From: Selaginella moellendorffii
Taxonomy: Eukaryota; Plantae; Lycopodiophyta
Assembly: GCF_000143415.4 (NCBI RefSeq)
Contig: NW_003314282.1
Location: 2,003,374-2,067,373, forward strand
Reading direction: 5' to 3'
DNA: 64,000 nucleotides
Both the position numbers and the translations under genes were made by a program. Of the stretch, positions 43,601 to 57,260 are shown piece after piece; positions within the stretch are counted from its first letter, which is position 1; each line of letters begins with the position of its first letter. The notes beneath the pieces are model-generated. The model was given only the letters and a program-made list of their open reading frames with translations, was not told the DNA's origin and did no database searches.

Positions 43601-46600
43601 CGTCTTCCCCCGTCCCTTCCGGTGCATGACGCGGCGCGGCCTCATCCCAGGCGGCAAGAGGTTTGAGATGGGATTCGAGTACACCCCGATGAGGCTGGAG
43701 CTGCACGAGAGCTTCTGGACCCTCCGCATCCCGGACAAGAGGATCGAGGTCAACTTCCTCCTGGTTGGCAACGTCAAGAAGCCCGAGCTGTCGCTCAGCT
43801 GCTCCCACGTCGACTTTGGCCAGGTCCTCGTCAAGGCCAGAGTGAAGCAGACCATCTACCTGCACAACCCCGAGCCTGGGCCCTTCGCCTTCAACTTCGA
43901 CAAGCTCAGCTACTCGCCGTCGCAGCCGGGCCAGGTTGCGGTGCTCACCTTCACTCCCTCGAGTGGCATTGTGGCCCAAGGTGCAACCATACCGGTGGAG
44001 CTGCTCTTCTCGCCGGCGCTGGAAGGCGACCACTCGTTCGACATCGTGTGCAACCTCCGCATGGCCTCCCCGCTCTTCATGTCTGTCAAGGCGGAGGCCT
44101 ACCTCTACCACGAGAAGCTCTACCTGGAAGGCGGGGACGACGGCAGGCCGCTCGCCCTCGTGGCAAAGGAGGCCTTCAGGCTAGACTACGGGCGGGTGAT
44201 GATCAACTCGAGGGTGTACCGAAAGTTCATCCTCACCAACTCGGGCAAAGCGGCCTTTCACTTCATGTGGGGCTGTGGCAGCGACAGCGCCCTGCTGCGA
44301 GCGGAGCCAGTCGCCGAGCTGGTGACCAAGGATGAGCAGCTCACCTGCGACCTCCTCTTTCACCCCACCGCAGAGAGGACATTTGTGGACCTTCCCATCG
44401 TATGCCAGATTATGCACGGCAACAAGTACCTCATCCATCTCAACGCCACCTGCTACCGCCCCAGGATCAAGTTCAGCTTCCACGACTTTGACTTTGGAGC
44501 CCGCTTCCTGCACCAGCCCGGCTTGACACCGCCCTCCACGGACCTCACGCTCTCCAACGAGGGTGACGAGGTGATCACCTGCGAGCTCCTGTACGAGAAC
44601 ACCTCCTTTCTGGAAGTGGAGTACGTCAACATGAGCTTGAGCCCCGGCCAAAACCACACCATCAGGGTGACTTTCAAGCCGGATGCCTTTGTGCTCTACA
44701 GGGAGGCTGTCAAGTTCCAAATATGTGGCCTCGACACTGTGACCATCTCGGTCAGAGGGGAAGGCGTGCCCGTTTTGCTCGAGCTAGTGGATCCCAGGCA
44801 GCGCTACTTGTCGTTTGGGGTGGTCCGGCTGGGGAAGACGGCAAAGCAACACGTTCAGATCACCAACAAGAGCAAAATCCTGGCTCCCATATCCTTTGAG
44901 CCTAGTGCCAACGCACTGGGCAAGCTGGGCATCACATGCCTGCCTGCCCAAGGCATCCAGCTGCCGCCGAGATACACTCGTCCCATGGAGCTCGTCTTCA
45001 CTCCACAAGCCAGGATGACCAAGTTTACCGAAGGCCTTGTGCTGGAAGTGGCGGGGACCCAGTCGAGAGTGCTGACAGTATCTGGCATTTGCCATGCTGT
45101 GGTGGTGAAGCTCAACCAGAGCGTTTTGCCCTTTGACATCGTAACACTGGGCTCCAAGGTGACCAAGAAGATACAGCTCGAAAACCACGGGGACCTGGCA
45201 ACCAACTTTGCGTGGGACACAACCAAGTGTGAGGCGGATTTCACCATCTTCCCCATGGAGGGGTTCCTGACCCCTCGTCAGGTGTCAAAGCTGGACGTGA
45301 CCTTCCATCCTTCGGCCGCTAATCCGGACATGAGAATCGAGGACATCCCTTGCCAAGTGGAGGGCGGCGAGCCACTGCACTTGACGCTCCTGGGGGGTTG
45401 TGTGGAGCAAGGGGCGCCTGCGGAGACGCTCAAGTTCATGACCGCCGTGCGGGCCACCGAGTCCAAGATGATCCAGCTCAAGAACCCGACAACGCAGAAC
45501 TGGCTCGTACATCCCGTCATCTCGCACCCCTATTGGAGTGGAGCGGTGACAGTGCAGGTGCCGGCCAACCAGAGCCTAGGCTACAGCCTCACCTACCGTC
45601 CCCTGACAATGAGCAACACGCACCGGGCCACCATCTCCTTCCCGCTGCCCTTCGGGGGCCTTGTGTCTTATCAGCTGTCGGGTGAGGCAGGGCCGCCACC
45701 TCCCGAGGCCAGCATCAAGCTGGACGCCAAGGCGCGGCTCACGCTCCCCTTCAGCCTGCACGTCCCAAACTGGCTCAAAGCCACTCAGCAGTTTGCCGTC
45801 ATGGTAAGCATGGTGCAGGGGGATGCCACGACAGTGATCAAGGGCCCCAAGACCATCGACGTGCCCGGGCTGTCCAACAAGGAGTGCGTGCTCTACTTCA
45901 AGGCCCATAAGCCTGGAAGCACCATGAGCACCGTCACGTTCAAGAACGAAGAGAGTGGTGAGTACTCGCTGTTCAACGTGACAGTGGAGACAGGCAGGGC
46001 CGACATTGTCGAGTCAGTGCTCCTCGAGTGCTTTGTGAGGCAGCAAGCGTCGCGCACGCTTCGCCTCAGGAATCCGCTGGACAGGCCTGTGGTGTTCAAG
46101 ACGAGCTGCACGGGCCAAGGCGTGGTGCTGCCCGCCCAGGTGCAAGCTGACGCAATGTCCAGCGCGGCAGTGGACGTTGCGTTTCGACCCCTGGTGCAGG
46201 GCAGCAGCCAGTGCAGCCTCAGTCTACACAGCGACGACCTCGGGGAATTCGAATACCAGCTGACGCTCAAGAGTGTGGCAGCGCCATCCGAGGCCCCGTT
46301 GCTCTTCTCCGTGCCCCTGGGCAATCAGCTCGTACAGACTTTCCACTTTAGGCACACACTTCCAGTCAAGGCCACGTACAATTGCCTGCTCTCTCAAGCA
46401 GCCATTGACGGAGGCTTCACGGCCGAACCCAGCATGGTGCAGGCCAATCCAGCACCGCCCGACGGCCTCGACCTCCAAGTCCAAGTCGTGTTCGAGCCGT
46501 CGCGGATCATGGACGAGTTCCAAGGCTTGCTCACGTTGAAATCGCCTGAAGGGTCTGACTTTTGCTGCCAGCTGCTGGCAAGCTGCAGCAGCCCGTCTCC

Positions 46601-46856
46601 TCAGGGTCCCTTCTTCATCAAGGGCAGTGGACAGATCAACTTCAAAAACGTTTACAACGACACCGTCCAGTTTAACTACACCACGGACAATCCAGCTTTT
46701 GTGGTGAGCAAAGGTGAGAAGATGCAGTCCAAGAAGCAGTCTAAGCTGGTTGTTAGCTACAAACCAGAAGCACCGAACGCCCCCAAGACTGGCCGACTCA
46801 CAGTGACTTGCAATGAAACAGATGATGTATGGTCGTTCTACCTGCAAGCTGTCTAG
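31697..46856 (+). CDS. HYDIN: HYDIN, axonemal central-pair apparatus protein (giant, many ASH/Ig-like repeats)
   Basis: N-terminus RPKPCIV...HQ|...PLFQPFPPEVVF.GY....Y...LQLRNNDK. Many ASH-type repeats (LDFG...L.N; F...P..G.L.PG). Adenylate-kinase-like P-loop GPPAVGKST. C-terminal RPWCHFELP.SDY, EFDSLG, NPTN..Y.F.W, ESFW...IP, PQGP, WSFYLQ*. Terminal exon is ~5.9 kb (40935-46856). Confidence 0.93.
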
Positions 46857-47011
46857 AGCTTATATCTATGTAATGCTACAAGCTCTCTTTGGGCTTGCAA
46901 TCCTTGTTATATATGCTACATGCTTTTATTTTAACTAATTTTAAGTTAGGGTCTGGTTTAAAACATTCTTTTTCCTTTACACGCAAATGAAACTTCATAT
47001 CTATTTAGGTC

Positions 47012-48105
47012 ATGGATGTGGCACCTGAAGAGCTTCCTGGACTTTATTCTTGGGTTTGTAGTTGAAGCTGATCTGATAGATCAGCTCAGTGCTGAGAGTT
47101 TTCAGGTTGACGGGATTCCGTTGTCAAGGCCGAAGAGAAACATCGCTCGGGATTTCAGCGATGGAGGTACTGTTTGCTAACATTCCATGTTGGATTAAAA
47201 CGATGTTTTCCGCCAGTATTAGCGGCAGAAGTTGTAGCACATTATTGCCCACGGCTTGTGGATATTCACAATTACAGTGCTGCCAACAGTCTTGCTCAGA
47301 AGATTTACAACTGGAACACTCTCAACAGTAAGCAACTTTCTGGTTATGCACATTTATTTTGTGTGTGCTGCAGACAAGGTTTTTAGACGTTTAAGCTTTT
47401 CCTTAACCAAGGAAGACGTCGAGGCAGTCGCAAATGCTGAAAACCAAATGATCGAAAGAATACTTAAGCTTTTGAAATATAAGGTAAATGTCTTCCGCTC
47501 CAAATTCGGTTTAGAAATTGTCATATTCTGCCAGATTGCCAAGTACAGGCCGATTAAAACAGAGTCAATGAAGCACGAGCCTAACGGTCATGGTATGATG
47601 GAGAAATGATCAAATAAGTAATCACACAGAAACATTGCTTTGGGAGGCTCTAGTCAAAACTCAAATTAGATTTTGTAGGCAACTACCCCATAAAAAGGCC
47701 CCCCCCTAGAATGTTTACACCGCCAAGCAGGTATGAGATTTTCGTCTTTCTTTTTATTGTTATACATGTTTTCTTGCAGGGGTCATGAAAGAGGACTTTC
47801 TGGTGTAAGTGTACAGTCTTTGTACTGGTTCGGTTCTTGATCTGGTTCAGTTGTACAGAGCCCGAAAAGGACAGATTCTCCAGAGAGACAGGAAAAGGAT
47901 GGGATGAATGAATCCCAAAAGGATATTCAACTCCGAGAGCTCCGGGAGACAATCGAGGTAATTAAGATTGTACAGTAACAGAATGATGAAATACTATAAG
48001 CAGTTGTTAGAAGCCAAAGTTATGAAGCTGGAGCAGCTTGTGAGCCTCAAAGACCACAAGATTCAAGTGCTGACAGGAAAGCCATCAAGACCTACACGAC
48101 CCTGA
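47012..48105 (+). CDS. SPEF1: Sperm flagellar protein 1 (SPEF1/CLAMP, CH-like domain plus C-terminal coiled coil)
   Basis: LYSW|VDGIPLSRPKRNIARDFSDG|VLAAEVVAHYCPRLVDIHNYSAANSLAQKIYNWNTLN.KVFRRL and C-terminal LEAKVMKLEQLVSLKDHKIQVL. TGA at 48103-48105. Confidence 0.92.
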
Positions 48106-48699
48106 ACATCTTAGCAGTTTTGTAAGTTGCCATTGCCATATCTACACATAATTTTTGCTAGTTCGGTGTGCCTTGTTCCTCGCTGCATTGTAGTTGAGCT
48201 TGAATGACATCACGTATTGATGTGCCATATTGTTCCTTAATTCATGCACTCCCAAGGGTTTGTTCTCTCATGGCCTTCAAGTGGGGATTTGTTAATCTGG
48301 AGGGATCCACAAGTATGCCATCTTGCTGGACGCGGCGTTTGAAGGCACATGTCGAGGGATCTCCATGCAAGAGAAGCAATGAAAAGGAATTGCTTACCAG
48401 ACAGATGACGGTACATTTTAAAAAAAAACTCTTGATTCCGACCACCCTTGCTGCCACGCTGCAGCCACGGCTTTTCGCTATATGAGTGACATAAGACAGA
48501 ACTCTGTTGATTGCTGGTATCAGAATCTGCCCAAAGTCCCTCCAGAAATTAGCAATAAAAATATGTTAAATAGAGGGAGCCAACAACAGTCTAGAACCTA
48601 CACCTTAAAGAAAATGCTTTATCTAGGTTTCAAGAGAATCTTTGGCCATGTGGTCAACGTGGGTCAAAAGTCAACTCAAAAGCTTGGACTATAAAATAT

Positions 48700-51200
48700 A
48701 ATTGTCTGGTGTAATATAGTATGGAAAGTTAATTCTCTATATCTTTCTTGTTTACTGGGGAGTCATAATATTAGTATTAAAGATGCTGGTTGTAATAGTA
48801 ACTAAGATGAATGTTGAAATCCTAATGTCAATGGAAGTGTTGACAGTGGTGCCAATAGAGGTGCTGAGGTGCTGAGGTTCTCTTATAAAACTTTGATATT
48901 TTAAGCAAGGGAAAATGGCACTTGGGGATTATATTAAAAAGCTTACATATTTGATTAACCATGTTCTAATGAAAAATCTGAATCAGAATAAGTCATACTT
49001 CATTAATAGCCTTCAAAGTGAGAGCATCAAAAAGTACTTGTGTCATTCCCAAAGTTTGGAGGAGCTCTTTGATGTGGTTTCAACTTTAAAATGATACAAT
49101 AATAGAAATAAATATCACAAGCTGAATTTAATATGAAAGGATCAAAGAGCAAAAGGTTTTTGTGAAAAATTATAGGCAAGGTTGTCATCATTGCAGTGGG
49201 CTTGGACACTAAAAGTTTGATTGTCCACAGCTGAAAAACAAGCAGCAGGGCAAAAGGAATGGTCAATCTTCTAATGACAGTAAGTTTAATACTAACAAGT
49301 TGTAAAATTTGTAACATAAAGATAACAAAGTGGAGTATTATAGTTGGAGGAAGCAGCTCCTGATCATTGTTCATCAACTCAACTAAGAAAAGGTTAAATA
49401 CACTTGTGATCAGCTTAAATGTGGGAAGCATGTTTCATGGAGGTTTAATATGGATTCTACTGGACAATGGAGCAATATGACCTTGTGTGTGGTGGCTCCA
49501 GTAAGCGAATTGCAGTATAATGGATTGCCTGTAGCAAACAATAACAAAGGTTTGGTGACAATGGCTCCAGAAATTTAACAGGTCCAAATGAGAGGGAATC
49601 CGTGTCAGCATTCTTGAGTTCAGTTTATTGAAAGAAGGCAAAAGGGTTTATGAAAGAAAAGTTCCAGGTTTCAGTATTTAGATCTGTTCTTCTTTAAAAG
49701 CTATTCTTACCTCTTGTATTACACATAAATTTGTCTATTTGCCCCCTATCAATCTGGCAACCATCCTGGCAAACACATTGCTCATAATTTATCTGGTGGC
49801 ATATCAATCCAGTCACTCCCAATTTTACAGAGAATAGTATGTTCAAGGTTAACTACAAAAGTACACAAAGAAGAGTGACAGAGTACAGAAGATCAGCAAT
49901 TTAAAGCACAAGAAAGGAAACGGCTTGGATTTGGTTCTTGAAATTGCATAGTTTATAAGCACTTTCTGCTATGGAGCATTGTGGCACATAGTTTTCAAAG
50001 TTTTATAAAATTAATTTTAAATAGTTCAATTTTCATTATATAAATTTAAATTATATCCTTTAACAAATGCTATTTGAAATACAATATACTCAAAAAATAT
50101 GAGTGCTTGATTGGGAAAAACAATAATAGCATCATGAGCCTAAGCATGCTCAACAAACTACATAAACTTGTTGACCATTTTACTCATGGTGATAAAACCA
50201 TGTCCATAACTCTGTTACATGATGAATATGCAATAAAGCATCCACTACCACATTTAATTTCCCTGGACAATTCTTGAAAGGAAACTCCTTAAACTCCATT
50301 AATTTGACCATCTAATGAGTTTGCCTAGTGTTCAACTCCTTATGTGTGAATAAATATATAAGAGGTTTGTGAACTGTCAACACCACAAACACTACACTAT
50401 AATAAAAATAGTGCCACCATGTCCACAAGGCATGAACAATTGAAAGTAGTTTTATTTCATATATGGAATATTGTTGCTCCGCAAGATTCAAAGTCAGATT
50501 TTTATATGCAATAAGCTGTCCTCTTGTAGCTCTTTTCATTAGAATGGCACATGCTTATGTAAATACCATATCAAAACAATAATCACCTTCACAAAGTTGG
50601 GTAGTAATAAATAAGCATACCAAGGAAACTGCTTAACTCAGCCACTGAAGTTGGTGTAGGCCAGCTCACCACCACAGTCATCTTGCTTGAATCTATCTTA
50701 ACACTTAAATTTTGTGATATTCTTCTCTTCCCAAAACTTCTATCTTGGTAGGTTTTCAAGTAGAGGAGCACGAGGTCTCACCATTGCGAGTTTACTATCT
50801 TTTATTACTAAGGGCGACTTTAGTAATGGAAACTAGAATGTCTTAGATGCTGAATCTATAAGAATGGCCTAGAACAGCAAGAAATTTGGTACATAAAGAC
50901 AAGGAAAAGGATAGAAATGCCAGGAAGAGAAAAGGAAAGAAAATCAGTGGTTAGTTAGCTCTTTTCCATGAACTTAGAGGTTGAGATTCAGGAGAACATC
51001 TGAGTATATAACCGTCCTTTGAAGAAGTGAACTAACCTTTTGAGCACTGGGGAACACAAGCCTTCCTTGGGTGTACTTGTTCCAATGTGGAAAGTAAGCT
51101 AGAAAGATTTTTGGCTTCTTGTGTGAAGCTTAGAACCTATGAAACACAAGCTAACATTGATTCAAACAAGAGAAAACACTCCCGGCCATCGTCTAATCAT
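48700..51200 (-). mobile_element. Degenerate Ty3/gypsy LTR-retrotransposon pol remnant; boundaries approximate
   Basis: Minus-strand fragments VVSWPTPTSVAELSSFLGMLIYY (RT connection, 50589-50771) and LAEQQYSIYEIKLLSIVHAL..W.HY....F.V.T.HKPL.YL...KELN.RQ (RNase H, 50312-50539). Many stops, AT-rich. Confidence 0.75.
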
Positions 51201-51960
51201 TAAGCAGGCCTGTACATGCAAATACACATGTGATCAATACATAAGGAGAGTAAGATCAATCCGACGAGCTGGTTTCTCTGCCAGTTTTCCATCCCTTAAT
51301 TCAGCTGTTCTTTGTCAGGTCATGCAAACATTTACTTGCAAAAGGTGTTCGAAGAGGCTAGCTGTCTTTTGCCCTCCGTGGTTTGTTAAGAACTCTCTGT
51401 TTGGAAGGACAAACCCTTAATCCACGTGGTATAAAATCCATGATGACATCTCTTCGCCGTTAACCTCAAAAAAGTAACTCACTTTAAAACAATATACTCC
51501 ACAGAAAAGTTTACTTTTGGCGCCCCTGATGTTATAGTACATCGTTGTAGCGGGTTCCTTTAGCCGCGGATATGCCCGTTTGGAGCTTTGACCGATGACC
51601 TGGCAGGGTGGGACATGGGGCACGGCAAGCGGTTGTGACCAGGAATGGGGACCACGTAGACGAATGTTTAGGGTTCTTGGCGAAAGCGAGTCTTGGCAGG
51701 TCGGGCATGGATTTTAAGGAGGTTGGAGGGCGAAGGGTGGAGGGATGATTGAAGAGCAAGAAGTGTAAGGCTGGTTTTGGAGCTCATTTGAGTTTCTGTA
51801 AGCCCTTTTCTGTATCCATGGACCTCGCTTGGGCATACGTCCAACGTTAAACCGCTACATTGTTCGGCTGTTTACTAAACTATCTCTTTCTAATCCACTG
51901 TGCATTTACCCAATTTGAGCATGCATAAGAAAACTATTTTGGGTAATAAGATTTTATTCT

Positions 51961-53551
51961 TCAGCAAATATTTATGTTGTTTCTGTTTCTATCGTGTAAG
52001 GGACCGCATGAATTTCTTTTGTCCTTGTCCTGCCATAAACACATATAGCTTCTGTGAATATAATGAAAAGTAGAGTGAACCTCAGTTGGAGATAAACTTG
52101 CATATGCAAGCCTGTCACATGCTAGTCTTAGCTCAGACTTTGCCATTGTTTTTGTGGACCACTGTTTGCGGTTAAGATGCCTTCCTGAATTTGTCCTTGA
52201 TTGTGGTGTCAGTAGTTCGATATTTGATGATCTAGGAGGAGGCCCTGGCACCATAATTCTCACTCTTTTATGGCCAGAAACGTTTAGTTCAATGCTTTCT
52301 TCCTCCAGTTTTACATTAGCATCTTGAGCATGTAAAACTAATTAGCCATCCAATAGTCTAAGCGACTTACCAAAACGTGGTGTAGAAGTGTCACAATCGG
52401 GCCTTGTCACCTTACCAAGCAAAGTACGCAATTTCCGTTGCTTCTCTAGGTGCTCTGTACGTTCGAGCTCTCTCTCCAACTCTTTGACTTTCTGCAGGCA
52501 CAAAATGAGGTAAACTCGACTCCACTCTTCCACCAGCTTACCTTTTTCATCAAGGCCCGCGACTGAGCAGCCTGGCCTCTCAAAAAGACCCGTCGTTTAA
52601 GCATATTAGTAGCATCGGATTGCATTGCTTTTTGAAATAGCAGAGACTGTGTCTGGGCAGATGCAGCCTTCCAAGCATTCAGTCTCTCTGGCTGAGGGTT
52701 TGGAAATGGCAAAGCGTGAAAAAATGTAAACTTGTATGTGCTTGGCTTGAAAGGGTTTGCCACACCTGCAGCTAAAAGGGTGTGAATGTTATCACTATAA
52801 ATAAATTAATGGCATACCAATGTTCATTTCGCCATGGTTTGGGTTTTTCGACCGTGAAGAATGCCTTGCGAACCTAACGATGCTTCTTTCTAAGCAGGCG
52901 GCAACTTCCTTAATCTTTTTTCTCTTATTTGCAATCCTCAGGATTTCTTGTAAATTTTCCATCCTATCATTCTCCTTTCCCAATATCAGGTGTTAGCAAT
53001 AAGTTTGAATTCCTGTCAAGAAAAAAAAACCTTTTGCAGTGCTTTCATAAACCTGTGACGCGCAACAGCTCTGGCCTCTTCAGCGTACTTTTGCAGGAAA
53101 TTAACATTTTTCATCTGTAAGGAGCAACTCGTGAGGGTGATAATAATGCGTATAAGTACTCACTTTGTCCAACATAAGTACAGCAGCTGCTCTATGGCCA
53201 TCACCAACGTTATTCAGCGCACATATGCATCTGTTTTCGAGTTCTTTCAGACGATAGTTATGATTTTGCTCCCAATCTTCCTGCAAGGTGGAATCAAGGA
53301 CAGATCGGTTGAAACTACGAGTACCTTCAGCTGGGTGAAGAATGCTTTTAAGTTCTCTTGCCTCCTCTGCAGATACCATTGTACTTCCTGTGATGAAAAC
53401 TGGCGTTCCTGGTCCCGCACCTGAAGGACGCACAATCTTTGTCTACCAAAATCGCATCAAACGTAACCTGCATCATTCGGGCTTTCCTCATCTTCTGCCG
53501 GCAGGATCGCAAATCAGATTCCTGCTGCTCTTTGGTCATGCGATATGCCAT
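51961..53551 (-). CDS. Putative CEP295/Ana1/DDC8 N-terminal-domain protein (centriolar), multi-exon; 3' end uncertain
   Basis: Hand splicing at GT-AG sites (exon1 53551-53468, exon2 53420-53325, exon3 from 53280) gives MAYRMTKEQQESDLRSCRQKMRKARMMQ|VRDQERQFS...QLK|EDWEQ...LKELENRCICALNNVGDGHRAA...ARHRFMKALQK, and later NAWKAA...VFLRGQAA...KELERELERTE. This follows the remembered CEP295 pattern RRRKLRLLQVREQER...AEWE...LASLRSMGEGHRQA...RHKEAL...DARLAA...AHVRG...KELKQL. Confidence 0.68.
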
Positions 53552-53974
53552 GATGCCACTGTTCTTGAAATGGACTCTGACTACCCAAGAATTGCTTCCA
53601 AGAATATTCTTTATCATAATCTTGCAAACAATAAAATAGTTTTTTAATCTGTGCTTCACTAGCAGCCTAGCAACAATTTATATTACAATCTTATGAGAAA
53701 CCTGACACGATGGCGACAGACTGCTGCTAATACCAGAAGAAAACCGATTTAAGGCGTCTTTGAATTTTTGAATCGGCGTTTGGAACTCTTCCACAGCTTT
53801 GTTCTATTTTCTCTTTCACAAATATCTAGAAGTTCAGGGTTTGAGCTTTTCTGCAAAAAGCCCAGCATGTGGAGTTTACATATGCAATATACATAAATGT
53901 CATGCACAAATAAACAATATCGCGACCAGTCCTTTTTTATTAACTGCCAAATAGGGTTTTGCAGTCAAGCGGCA

Positions 53975-55438
53975 ATGGAAGTGCTAGGTTCTAAGCAGGA
54001 CAAATCTGCTGCCATGAGTTCCAAAGTCATGGTACGCACAGCCGCTGGCAGCAAGTAGAAATTCTAGTTATGTGTTTTAGGCATTGCTGCGAAAGCTGTC
54101 AATTGACACTTGGCTTAGAGCGCATGGAAAATCTGTACGCCCTGAGTTGACGAAAAAGCAAAAGCAGGAGCTGAAAGAATGTTTTGAGCTGATTGATTTA
54201 GAAGGATCAGGTGGCAAGTCTTTTCCCATTTTAATGGCTGTTGAGGAACATTTGCAGGTGCCATTGACGGTTGTGAGCTCATGGCAGCATTTAATGTTTT
54301 AGGAATGCATGTGACTAGGTCCGAAATAGATAGGCTTTTGGACGAGGTGGACGAAGCCAAATGTGGTGAGGTTCGAACTTCTTTTGCTTTTTCCGGGTAG
54401 AACCTTGATAGTTTTTGTCCAGGTTGAGTATCCTGACTTTGTTCGTATTATGAAGTCCAAGCTCGAAACCCAATCTGAAGACTCTAATGATGAAGATTGT
54501 AAAAACACAACTTTACTCCTTTCCTAGAGTATCAATGTTGTTCCTTCTAATTTAGCGAAGCTCAAAGGCCAACAGCTTCCATTCCAGCTTCTTGCACGCG
54601 CATATCGGCGCAAGAAGGTTTGAGTAAATTAATTAAATTACATTTTGCCTATTTTTAATTTTCAGCTTATCGAGGCAGTGATGATTGGCGATAAAACTGC
54701 TCAAGAACGCTTGAGAGCAAAAGCTCTTGAAGCTGAAGCAGAACACCTGTCTGTGCTGGCTGCTATGGAAGCAGAAAGACAAAATCCGGTCTGTTTGGAA
54801 TTTTCATCTATTAGAGATTTGCTTTTTAGTTGCCCCAGACTTTGGCTTATGACGAAAAGGACTTGCGGACAATGTCTGACATCAACTACCAGGTTGGTAG
54901 CATATATGAAGATGACTGTTCTCTTATCTTTGGCATACAGAAACTGAGGCAGGCTCAAGTTCGAGACAAGCACATCAGTACGCTTTGATCTTCGTTCAGG
55001 TAGCTAGTTACCTCTGCATCAGTTGCAGATCGCTCGTTTCCAAGCTACGTTGTGGATAGCCTTGACGAAGATGTAAAGAAAATACTCTATGGAGTTCAGG
55101 AAAACGAAATTCCAGCTGCCACTGACGAAGACAGCTTGTTTGCGGGTAATGATACATATTAGTCAAAAACTGAAATGCATAATGGTTCAGCTGTTTTCAT
55201 ACAACCCGGGCAAGAGATAAAGCCTATCAGTTTGAGCAAGCAGATAAAAGACTCTTACAAGACAGAGCTAGCAGATGTCAGTCAGCGCCATTGCAAGGTT
55301 GGGCATTTGACTTTATTTTTCTAAAGGTAGAGTAAAGTAAAAACACAGGTTCGGCATAAGCCCGTGCTTGAGCAGCAGATGATTCACCTGAAGGCACTCA
55401 AGTCTTTGCAAGAAGCTCAACAAAGAAAAAGTTTGTAA
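53975..55438 (+). CDS. Centrin-like protein with a single EF-hand pair and a novel C-terminal region, multi-exon
   Basis: ELTKKQKQELKECFELIDLEGS|GAIDGCELMAAFNVLGM..TRSEIDRLLDEVDEAKCGE|VEYPDFVRIMKSK resembles the centrin N-lobe. It continues LPFQLLARAYRRKK|LIEAV and helical segments. TAA at 55436-55438. Confidence 0.75.
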
Positions 55439-57260
55439 GAAGGGGGAACAACTATTATCCTCGACTATGTATCCTTTGCCACCAATTACTATGTTGCTGG
55501 CATGGATCCCTGGGTAAAGTGGATTTGAAATTTAAAAGTGGACTTTAATTTCTCTCAGCGACTCGCACTTCATCCTCACCCCAACAGACTTCCCTCTACT
55601 GTGAACATTGGTGAGGCTGGGGCCGTCCATGCAGACACCGGTGGAATATGCTGCTGCGGAGAACGTCGCACCTCTTGGAAATGCCGTCATCCTATGGGAG
55701 TTTTTGACAAGTCATCCATGGTATCAAATCTACAAACTCCGTTCTTGACAAGGGAAATGGCACATTGGACTGCACTCGCAATCACCCAAGCGCTATTTCC
55801 ATGACGGGGTGCACCGCTGCAAGAAGAGAGCCCGTTCCGTTTAGTTAACCGATTAGAGCGACCTCTCGCACAGGAAAGAAGCAGATGAAGGTAAGGGGGC
55901 TCTGTCTTCTAAGTGGAAAAAGCAAGGCTTTTACGTCTCGTTGGAGGGACCAAGTACCGGGGGCATGGCATTCTCGGTTCTTCATGGTCGGAAGAAGCCG
56001 GCTGCGACATGGGCTGAAGAATCTTCCGAGGAGGAGATCAACATTCTGTCACTGTCTTTGGAGGAACTTCATGGAGAGGTAAGCGTCTTGCATCAGCAGG
56101 AGCTGAAAGACGCTCAAGGTGGTCAAGGGATCCAGGAGGATGGAATGGCCTATAGGCGACAAGAGGATCTTGAACGACAAATGGAAGAAAGGATGCAAAG
56201 GAGCTACTGTGGTGTAGCCGATCCAAGAACACCAGGCCGGCAAGCATCCGGGGTGCAGGACGTTCACAAGGAGTGGGTTTCCGGGATCTCGGACAACTAG
56301 AAACTTCCTTTTTTGGGAATGTTGGCATAGACTTTGATCCAGGCGTCTTCTATGCAACTTCTGAAAGTATGAGAGGCAGCTCAGAGCAATCGTGGACCAT
56401 GGCTGTTGGACATAGAAGCGATCTCAACAGCTGGAACAGCCAATCATGTTGCTAAAGTCGAGAGAATTCCCAATGTACAATGCGGGACAAGAAGGGAAAG
56501 AAGGAATTGGCCAGAGCGGGTCAAGGAAGAAGAGGAGAGAGAAAGATGTAGGAAAATGAGAAACACAACCTACCTTCAGCCACTCCTTTATATCGTGTGC
56601 TCATACCAAGAAGTGGCTGTTTCCTTTACCAAGCTCTTCTCCTTTAGCTTCAGGTGCTGGATTCTTTGTTCAGCCGGTGTCTTCATGGCATCACTCATGG
56701 GAGCATCATCCACCAAGCCAGTGGGGCAAACATTCAGTGATCCCGGTGTTTGGTCCTCTTGATATTTTCACTCCAAGAAAGCTGCTGCTATGGGCGTTTC
56801 CGTTGGTTCACAGCCGAGCAGCGAGAATTGCCAAAGCAAAAGTTCTATTGATAAACCAGCTTTTAGCTCACTCTCACAGGTTTGATTTTCACACGAGGCT
56901 CAACAAATGGCCCAATGCTGCTGAGCTCTTCAGATCAGTGGCACCCAACCTGGTCTACTTAGAAGGGAAAAAACTCTGTAGGGATGATCCTCAGAGTAGT
57001 CTCCTCCTATGCAAGTGTTTCTGTGACTAAGTACGACAAACACTGTGACCAAGTAACAAGCCTTTGAACATCATATTCTTGACCACATTGGAACAGAAAA
57101 ACAAAAAGGAAAGGTTTAGCCACAGCTAGGCTCGCTCACTTTCATACCACCCAGTGAGACTGCACCATTTACAAAAATGATATCTGCGAGAACTAGAAAA
57201 CGATGCAAGTGTTCGCGAGAAAAGAAAAGTATATTTGTTGTAAAATGATTTATGCCAACC

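What the first reader, a model, noticed from the sequence alone, without database searches (positions are those of the whole stretch)
51961..53551. Cryptic plant homolog of the centriole factor CEP295/Ana1 (DDC8-like N-terminal domain)
Seen: the ORF track misses this gene because 44-47 bp introns shift frame. Splicing at canonical GT-AG sites gives RMTKEQQESDLRSCRQKMRKARMMQVRDQER...LKEDWEQ...LKELENRCICALNNVGDGHRAA...RHRFMKALQK...KIKEVAACLERS...NAWKAA...VFLRGQAA...KELERELE. Established, recalled from memory: human CEP295 begins RLSPNEE..LKEDYERRRKLRLLQVREQER...RAEWEE...IQNLE..YLASLRSMGEGHRQA...RHKEAL, with later DARLAA, AHVRG and KELKQL blocks. CEP295/Ana1 acts with CEP135/BLD10 in centriole elongation and centriole-to-centrosome conversion and is mostly described from animals. 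Inference: several colinear blocks indicate real homology. The protein looks short (roughly 400 aa), like CEP295NL/DDC8, and could act in de novo basal-body (bicentriole) assembly in plant sperm.
Basis: partly seen in the sequence, partly recalled or inferred. Interest (0 to 1): 0.85.

Follow-up and report, generated by a model that had tools for sequence, protein, structure and literature searches.

The report
Spikemoss protein with CEP295 N-terminal domain
A small, multi-exon gene of the spikemoss Selaginella moellendorffii, so far labelled only "hypothetical protein", carries the conserved N-terminal domain of the animal centriole-building protein CEP295/Ana1, which papers list as missing from plants, so it is a testable candidate for building the basal bodies of plant sperm.

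Summary
On the minus strand, 53551 to 51989 (or 51964), lies a gene of 8-9 short exons with GT-AG introns of 44-56 nt. Joining the exons reproduces exactly the deposited 400-aa model SELMODRAFT_413867 (EFJ25856.1, D8RQH0). The gene is therefore annotated, but only as "hypothetical". The second haplotype carries an allele of 377 aa, SELMODRAFT_404784.

Both alleles carry a precomputed Pfam hit to PF28375 "CEP295NL" in the strongest class (E at most 1e-5). Residues 1-135 also land on CEP295 N-terminal clusters in the ESM Atlas (score 0.92, 176-187 shared features).

The protein is short. A convergent giant flagellar-type gene ends about 240 nt downstream, and no ALMS motif was found. It therefore resembles the N-terminal-only form (CEP295NL/DDC8), not full-length CEP295.

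Not shown:
- Transcripts: two RNA runs gave no reads.
- Orthologues in other plants: none found, but the searches were limited by length and word filters.
- Any function.
- Purifying selection: the two haplotypes show none (pN/pS about 1, 14 differences).

No held paper mentions CEP295 together with Selaginella, and one review table lists Ana1/CEP295 as absent from land plants. The scan had noted this same stretch once before (s1-402911).

Verdict: a new plant member of a known domain family. Interest is moderate.

The parts
53468..53551 (-). Exon 1 (28 codons, ATG at 53551). In the other haplotype codon 10 is TAG, so that allele's model starts at Met21 (MRKARMMQ).
53325..53420 (-). Exon 2 (32 codons, VRDQER block), after a 47-nt GT-AG intron.
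53164..53280 (-). Exon 3 (39 codons, EDWEQ and GDGHR blocks), after a 44-nt intron. The GDG lies at a predicted helix break.
53031..53114 (-). Exon 4 (28 codons), after a 49-nt intron. Exons 1-4 plus the start of exon 5 encode residues 1-135, the part that resembles the CEP295 N-terminal domain.
52818..52974 (-). Exon 5 (52 codons plus 1 nt), after a 56-nt intron. It holds a 9-nt in-frame indel between the haplotypes.
52542..52771 (-). Exon 6 (about 76 codons). The acceptor is at 52771 (my model) or 52765 (deposited model), and both are in frame. It encodes a disordered Pro-rich linker and the start of the long helix 205-280.
52371..52491 (-). Exon 7 (KELERELE coiled-coil stretch), after a 50-nt intron.
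51964..52337 (-). 3' exon or exons, structure uncertain. The deposited model has 52337-52081 and 52051-51989, with introns of 33 and 29 nt. The alternative has 52322-51964 after a 48-nt intron. The product here is predicted mostly disordered.
53552..53974 (.). Spacer of about 420 nt between this gene and the divergent EF-hand gene. It may be a shared promoter region (inference only).
53975..55500 (+). 5' part of the divergent neighbour, an EF-hand protein (EF-hand_7; model of 465 aa, 592 aa on the other haplotype). The model runs on to about window 56300, beyond this entry.
45989..51748 (+). 3' part of the convergent neighbour, a giant 4796-aa protein with HYDIN/CFAP65-type Ig, ASH and CH_2 domains (flagellar type). 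It ends about 240 nt from this gene's stop.

Best explanation
This is a real nuclear gene of Selaginella moellendorffii (SELMODRAFT_413867; the allele on the other haplotype is SELMODRAFT_404784). It encodes a basic, almost all-helical protein of about 400 aa. Its first ~135 residues are homologous to the conserved N-terminal region of animal CEP295/Ana1, variously called the DDC8-like domain, CR1, or Pfam PF28375 'CEP295NL'. It has the N-terminal module only: no ALMS motif was found, and there is no room for the long C-terminal half that recruits pericentriolar material in animals.

Inferred mechanism. In spermatogenous cells the N-terminal helical domain brings the protein to the proximal wall of newly forming basal bodies. 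There its Arg/Lys-rich helices bind triplet microtubules and perhaps BLD10/CEP135, helping the basal bodies to elongate and remain stable. The centrosome-conversion function of the animal C-terminus would be absent, which fits plants having no centrosome.

Shown here: the gene structure, the identity with the deposited model, the domain homology and the short architecture. Inferred: expression in sperm cells, centriole localisation, and the binding partners.
For: - Gene model: the exons reproduce the deposited protein exactly, and both haplotypes keep all the splice sites compared and, from Met21 on, the open frame.
- Homology: PF28375 CEP295NL hits in the strongest precomputed class (E at most 1e-5) on P0004 and P0001.
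- Homology: the ESM Atlas feature search gives 0.83 for the whole protein and 0.92 for residues 1-135. The top clusters are CEP295 fragments and CEP295 N-terminal-like proteins in which 98% of members carry PF28375.
- Architecture: AF2 predicts helices 7-34, 38-83, 87-100, 104-168 and 205-280, with disordered stretches at 169-204 and 281-358. The protein is 19% Arg plus Lys.
- Short form: the convergent giant gene ends about 240 nt downstream, and there is no ALMS_motif hit at E up to 10.
- Context: the flanking genes are of flagellar type, an EF-hand protein and a HYDIN/CFAP65-like giant.
- Literature: the DDC8-like domain is needed for centriolar localisation of human Cep295 (PMC5007451). 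CR1 (Ana1 aa 19-134) is found in all CEP295/Ana1 homologues and binds Cep135 weakly, and the Ana1 N-terminal part binds microtubules through a basic patch (PMC13422256).
Against: - No transcript evidence: 0 reads in two RNA runs, whose tissue is unknown.
- No relative outside Selaginella was found. All these searches were restricted by length, word index or query piece.
- The two haplotype alleles differ by 11 nonsynonymous (one of them the stop at codon 10) and 3 synonymous changes, giving pN/pS of about 1. One allele has a stop at codon 10 and there is a 9-nt indel. There is therefore no sign of purifying selection, although the power is very low.
- The local Pfam copy lacks PF28375, so I could not see the alignment, score or domain borders myself.
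- Structure searches were uninformative.
- In flies, deleting CR1 affected neither Cep135 binding nor microtubule co-sedimentation (PMC13422256), so what this domain does is unclear even in animals.
Confidence: 0.68

Rival explanations
1. The domain homology is real, but the protein works elsewhere in the sperm motile apparatus rather than at the basal-body wall. Candidate sites are the spline or multilayered-structure microtubules, or the axoneme.
For: The neighbouring genes are axonemal or central-apparatus types, not centriole core genes. The protein is basic and helical, as many microtubule-associated proteins are. The role of CR1 is unresolved even in flies (PMC13422256).
Against: In human cells the DDC8-like domain is specifically required for centriolar localisation (PMC5007451).
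Confidence: 0.17
2. The gene is a decaying relic. It is recognisable but no longer under selection, and it makes no functional protein.
For: pN/pS is about 1 between the haplotypes. One allele has a stop at codon 10, and there is a 9-nt indel. There were no RNA reads, and no close relatives were found.
Against: In both haplotypes the reading frame downstream of Met21 stays open, and all splice sites compared are intact. The indel is in frame. Exon divergence (1.07%) is lower than intron (1.6%) and flank (2.8%) divergence. Fourteen differences give no statistical power. Sperm-specific genes are expected to be missing from ordinary RNA runs.
Confidence: 0.1
3. The similarity to CEP295 is a chance match between charged helical or coiled-coil sequences, and the protein is an unrelated coiled-coil protein.
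For: The protein is helical and rich in R, K, E, Q and L. I could not inspect the Pfam alignment. No PDB, local Pfam or fold match helps to decide.
Against: Two different methods point to the same family: the profile HMM at E at most 1e-5 on both alleles, and the language-model features, whose score rises from 0.83 to 0.92 when only residues 1-135 are used. The match is confined to the N-terminus and is not spread over all helices.
Confidence: 0.08

Closest known systems
CEP295 (human KIAA1731) / Drosophila Ana1
   Same: It shares the conserved N-terminal region (DDC8-like domain, CR1, Pfam PF28375), followed by basic helical segments. The animal proteins act at the proximal centriole wall in elongation, stability and Cep135 binding (PMC5007451, PMC13422256, PMC4958302).
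   Different: The plant protein has about 400 aa, against roughly 1700-2600 aa. No ALMS motif was detected. There is no room for the C-terminal half, which carries the PICA motif and the sites that recruit CEP192, CEP152/Asl and Polo. Plants have no centrosome to convert to. Orthology, as opposed to a shared domain, is not shown.
CEP295NL / DDC8 (vertebrate CEP295 N-terminal-like protein)
   Same: It is a short protein made essentially of the CEP295 N-terminal-like domain plus helical and disordered tails, and this is the protein after which PF28375 is named. From my own knowledge, not checked here, DDC8 is known as a testis-expressed gene, which parallels the expected sperm-cell role.
   Different: I take CEP295NL to be a vertebrate paralogue (from my own knowledge, not checked here), so the plant gene could not be its orthologue. 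Its own function is essentially uncharacterised: 34 held papers mention it, and the 20 listed do so only in gene lists.
BLD10/CEP135, SAS6 and POC1 in plant bicentriole assembly
   Same: They are conserved centriole proteins shown to act in de novo basal-body formation in Physcomitrium sperm cells (bioRxiv 10.1101/2020.12.21.423647). The present protein would join this toolkit as a partner of BLD10.
   Different: They are unrelated in sequence. Their role in plants is tested experimentally, whereas this one is untested.

Membership tests
CEP295 N-terminal-like domain family (Pfam PF28375, CEP295NL) | Significant match to the family profile | tested here: met
   The precomputed hit is unmarked (E at most 1e-5; about 98 in 100 of such hits pass Pfam's own threshold) on P0004 and P0001. 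I could not rerun it, because the local Pfam copy lacks this model.
CEP295 N-terminal-like domain family (Pfam PF28375, CEP295NL) | Independent similarity of the N-terminal ~135 residues to known members | tested here: met
   ESM Atlas features give 0.92 with 176 and 187 shared features of 256, and 8 hits in the PF28375 set. The whole protein gives 0.83.
CEP295/Ana1 (full-length centriole-to-centrosome conversion factor) | ALMS motif at the C-terminus (vertebrate CEP295) | tested here: not met
   No ALMS_motif hit at E up to 10, either in P0001 or in the exon pieces of the window gene.
CEP295/Ana1 (full-length centriole-to-centrosome conversion factor) | PICA motif (43 aa near the C-terminus; PMC5007451) | not testable with these tools
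   No profile or real sequence of the motif could be obtained. The protein ends at about residue 400, and the next gene is about 240 nt away.
CEP295/Ana1 (full-length centriole-to-centrosome conversion factor) | Large protein (well over 1500 aa) with a long central and C-terminal region | tested here: not met
   The protein has 400 aa (deposited model) or 415 aa (my model). A convergent neighbour bounds the gene.
CEP295/Ana1 (full-length centriole-to-centrosome conversion factor) | Cep135-binding helix with invariant R-F-x-x-I-x-x-x-V-x-x-x-E (Ana1 282-294; PMC13422256) | tested here: inconclusive
   The helix 205-280 holds an R-V-F-L-R-G stretch, but the spacing does not match the published pattern by eye. 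No alignment with real Ana1 or CEP295 sequences was possible.
CEP295/Ana1 (full-length centriole-to-centrosome conversion factor) | Localisation to the proximal centriole wall and a requirement for elongation or stability | not testable with these tools
   This needs experiments.
Sperm-specific flagellar/basal-body gene set of non-seed plants | Expression in spermatogenous tissue; present in plants with flagellated sperm and absent from those without | tested here: inconclusive
   There were 0 reads in two RNA runs of unknown tissue. No orthologues were found in any other plant, but the searches were restricted by length or word index.

The most novel reading that the evidence does not exclude
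The CR1/DDC8-like module of CEP295/Ana1 is not an animal (or opisthokont) invention but predates the split of plants and animals. Plants with swimming sperm would then keep a minimal N-terminal-only form that acts with BLD10/CEP135 on the basal-body wall during de novo (bicentriole or blepharoplast) assembly. The PCM-recruiting C-terminal half would be either a later addition in the animal lineage or lost in plants.
Probability: 0.4. Interest if true: 0.65.

Novelty: new member of a known kind. Interest (0 to 1): 0.48.

Why it matters
CEP295/Ana1 is a key factor for centriole elongation, stability and centriole-to-centrosome conversion, and it has been studied only in animals. The paper that defined its conserved domains found no homologue in Chlamydomonas (PMC5007451). 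A review table of spindle and centriole factors marks Ana1/CEP295 as present in human and fly, with no entry for moss or Arabidopsis (PMC5371999).

A plant protein carrying the conserved N-terminal domain alone has two consequences. It pushes the origin of this module much further back. It also offers a natural "minimal" version for asking what CR1 does, a question the 2026 fly study left open (PMC13422256).

It adds a candidate to the short list of known players in de novo basal-body assembly in plant sperm (SAS6, BLD10, POC1).

The value is tempered in three ways. A database profile already flags the protein. No orthologue in a genetically tractable plant was found here. Neither expression nor function is shown.

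Tried and rejected
- **Local Pfam scans.** Scans of eight exon pieces and of P0001 gave only noise. The local library lacks PF28375.
- **RNA evidence.** The one read-laying run (3501 letters, within the operators' limit) gave 0 reads in RNA runs X3 and X4 and unspliced genomic contigs in X1 and X2, so no junction could be confirmed.
- **The search for homologous proteins (three searches, now used up).** I searched with the exon-6 read-through piece, with P0004 region 1-135, and with P0004:1-135 alone. These gave nothing beyond the Selaginella alleles. The length windows of 65-208, 220-700 and 74-236 aa exclude full-length CEP295.
- **phmmer of exon 6 against 1.84 billion representatives.** It found only the Selaginella protein and two repeat-rich false matches, P0002 and P0003. 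This used the single job, so no profile search with the N-terminal domain could be run.
- **Spliced protein as a query.** The deposited proteins P0004 and P0001 served instead.
- **Direct alignment with CEP295.**
- **Other searches.** The metagenome scan found no relatives. The PDB sequence search gave noise. The ESM Atlas search with exon 3 alone gave no usable hit. The ESM Atlas structure search and the Foldseek-type atlas search of the AF2 model (pLDDT 57.6) gave only generic long-helix matches.
- **Koshimizu et al. supplements.** They hold neither Selaginella gene id.
- **Contamination or transfer.** I rejected this. The gene has Selaginella-type short introns and lies on megabase scaffolds in both haplotypes.

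Full report
**What is there**

The ORF list for 50.5-55.5 kb shows only short fragments on the minus strand. Read on the minus strand and translated in three frames, the fragments join at canonical GT-AG sites into one open reading frame that starts at the ATG at 53551.

The introns are 47, 44, 49, 56, 46 (or 52), 50 and 48 (or 33) nt long. That is the very short intron type expected for the spikemoss Selaginella moellendorffii. Earlier scan notes named this species, and the accession numbers later confirmed it. My own model gives 415 aa.

**The gene is already annotated**

A phmmer search with the longest internal exon (76 aa) against 1.84 billion representative proteins returned one true hit, P0001, at 99% identity. 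The other two hits are tandem-repeat proteins that matched by composition.

P0001 is EFJ35386.1, SELMODRAFT_404784 (377 aa). Its cluster also holds P0004, which is EFJ25856.1, SELMODRAFT_413867, UniProt D8RQH0 (400 aa). Nine exons in window coordinates reproduce P0004 exactly, and the contig look-up places it on GL377586.1 at this spot.

It is a deposited "hypothetical protein". P0001 is the allele on the second haplotype scaffold.

The deposited model and mine agree on the first six junctions, apart from a 6-nt alternative acceptor. They differ at the 3' end, where the deposited model uses introns of only 33 and 29 nt. Without RNA the C-terminus stays uncertain.

**Is it related to CEP295?**

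The local Pfam library gave nothing for the exon pieces or for P0001. The precomputed domain tables of the large collections, however, list PF28375 "CEP295NL" for both alleles. The hit is in the unmarked class, meaning E at most 1e-5, of which about 98 in 100 pass Pfam's own threshold. The family is newer than the local library copy.

The ESM Atlas feature search gave independent support. It placed the whole protein nearest to clusters named "CE295 protein (Fragment)" and "CEP295 N-terminal-like protein domain-containing protein" at 0.83. With residues 1-135 alone the score rose to 0.92, with 176 and 187 shared features and 8 hits in that family set. By the tool's own calibration these values are typical of same-family matches.

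Two different methods therefore point to the same family and to the same part of the protein. I could not fetch any real CEP295 or Ana1 sequence, because the length and word limits of the searches excluded them. As a result I did not see a residue-level alignment.

**Architecture**

AF2 without an alignment is of low confidence (pLDDT 57.6), but the secondary structure is clear:
- helices at 7-34, 38-83, 87-100, 104-168 and 205-280;
- disordered stretches at 169-204 (a Pro-rich linker) and 281-358.

The G-D-G of the GDGHR block sits at a helix break. Arg plus Lys make up 19% of the residues. No ALMS motif was found.

The gene is bounded on both sides. About 420 nt upstream lies a divergent EF-hand gene. 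About 240 nt downstream a convergent 4796-aa gene ends, which carries HYDIN/CFAP65-type Ig, ASH and CH_2 domains. There is no room for the long C-terminal half of animal CEP295. This is an N-terminal-only form, like vertebrate CEP295NL/DDC8.

**Is it alive?**

Both haplotypes keep all the splice sites compared and the frame. Divergence is 1.07% in exons, 1.6% in introns and 2.8% in flanks.

Some points count against strong constraint, though:
- The coding differences are 11 nonsynonymous (one of them a stop codon) to 3 synonymous, giving pN/pS of about 1.0.
- One of the eleven changes codon 10 to a stop in the other haplotype. This is why that model starts at Met21.
- Exon 5 carries a 9-nt in-frame indel.

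Fourteen differences have almost no statistical power, so this neither shows nor excludes constraint.

Two RNA-seq runs of the species gave no reads anywhere on 51500-55000, including the neighbouring gene. This is expected for sperm-cell genes in vegetative tissue, but it proves nothing either way.

**Likely mechanism (inference)**

In human cells the DDC8-like domain is required for centriolar localisation of Cep295 (PMC5007451). In flies the CR1 region (aa 19-134) is found in all homologues and binds Cep135 weakly. The main Cep135-binding helix lies about 150 residues further on, and a basic patch in the N-terminal part binds microtubules (PMC13422256).

By analogy, I propose the following for the spikemoss protein. 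It docks on the proximal wall of basal bodies that form de novo in spermatids. It binds triplet microtubules, and possibly BLD10/CEP135, through its basic helices. It thereby supports elongation and stability, without any PCM-recruiting function.

BLD10, SAS6 and POC1 are known to act in this process in moss (bioRxiv 10.1101/2020.12.21.423647). The published Cep135-binding pattern could not be recognised with confidence in the plant helix 205-280.

**Comparison with what is known, and novelty**

No held paper contains both CEP295 and Selaginella. The two papers that mention CEP295 together with Physcomitrium or Physcomitrella do not report a plant homologue. One of them tabulates Ana1/CEP295 as present in human and fly only (PMC5371999). 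Tsuchiya et al. found no Chlamydomonas homologue.

On the other hand, the Pfam 38-era profile already tags this protein, so the domain assignment exists in databases. I file it as a new (plant) member of a known domain family. It is not a member of full-length CEP295/Ana1, whose size and C-terminal features it lacks.

No orthologue in any other plant was found, but every search that could have found one was restricted.

The scan had noted this same stretch before (s1-402911) and the surrounding cilium-gene cluster (s1-408347, s1-402700).

Noticed in passing
window 45989-51748 (+), from L001:7804-13563: There is a giant gene model (4796 aa) with HYDIN/CFAP65-like Ig, ASH, CH_2 and CAMSAP_CH domain hits. 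It is a flagellar central-apparatus type protein, convergent with the CEP295NL-like gene. Other scan notes (s1-408347, s1-402700) describe a run of cilium genes here.
   Followed up: partly
window about 53975-56300 (+): A divergent EF-hand gene (EF-hand_7; model of 465 aa here and 592 aa on the other haplotype) starts about 420 nt from the CEP295NL-like gene. The two may share a promoter. The models differ in length between the haplotypes.
   Followed up: partly
window 50315-50539 (-): An ORF matches the RNase H-like domain of reverse transcriptase (RT_RNaseH, E 7.7e-14). It is a retrotransposon fragment inside the AT-rich span (GC 0.38) covered by the giant gene model, so it is probably intronic or the model is wrong there.
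   Followed up: partly
window 53524 versus L002 (other haplotype): A C-to-T difference turns codon 10 (CAG) into TAG in the other haplotype. The two alleles therefore cannot both use the upstream ATG, and Met21 may be the real start in both.
   Followed up: yes
window 52338-52370 and 52052-52080 (-): The deposited gene model uses introns of 33 and 29 nt, much shorter than the 44-56 nt of the other seven. The 3' end of SELMODRAFT_413867 may be mis-modelled.
   Followed up: partly
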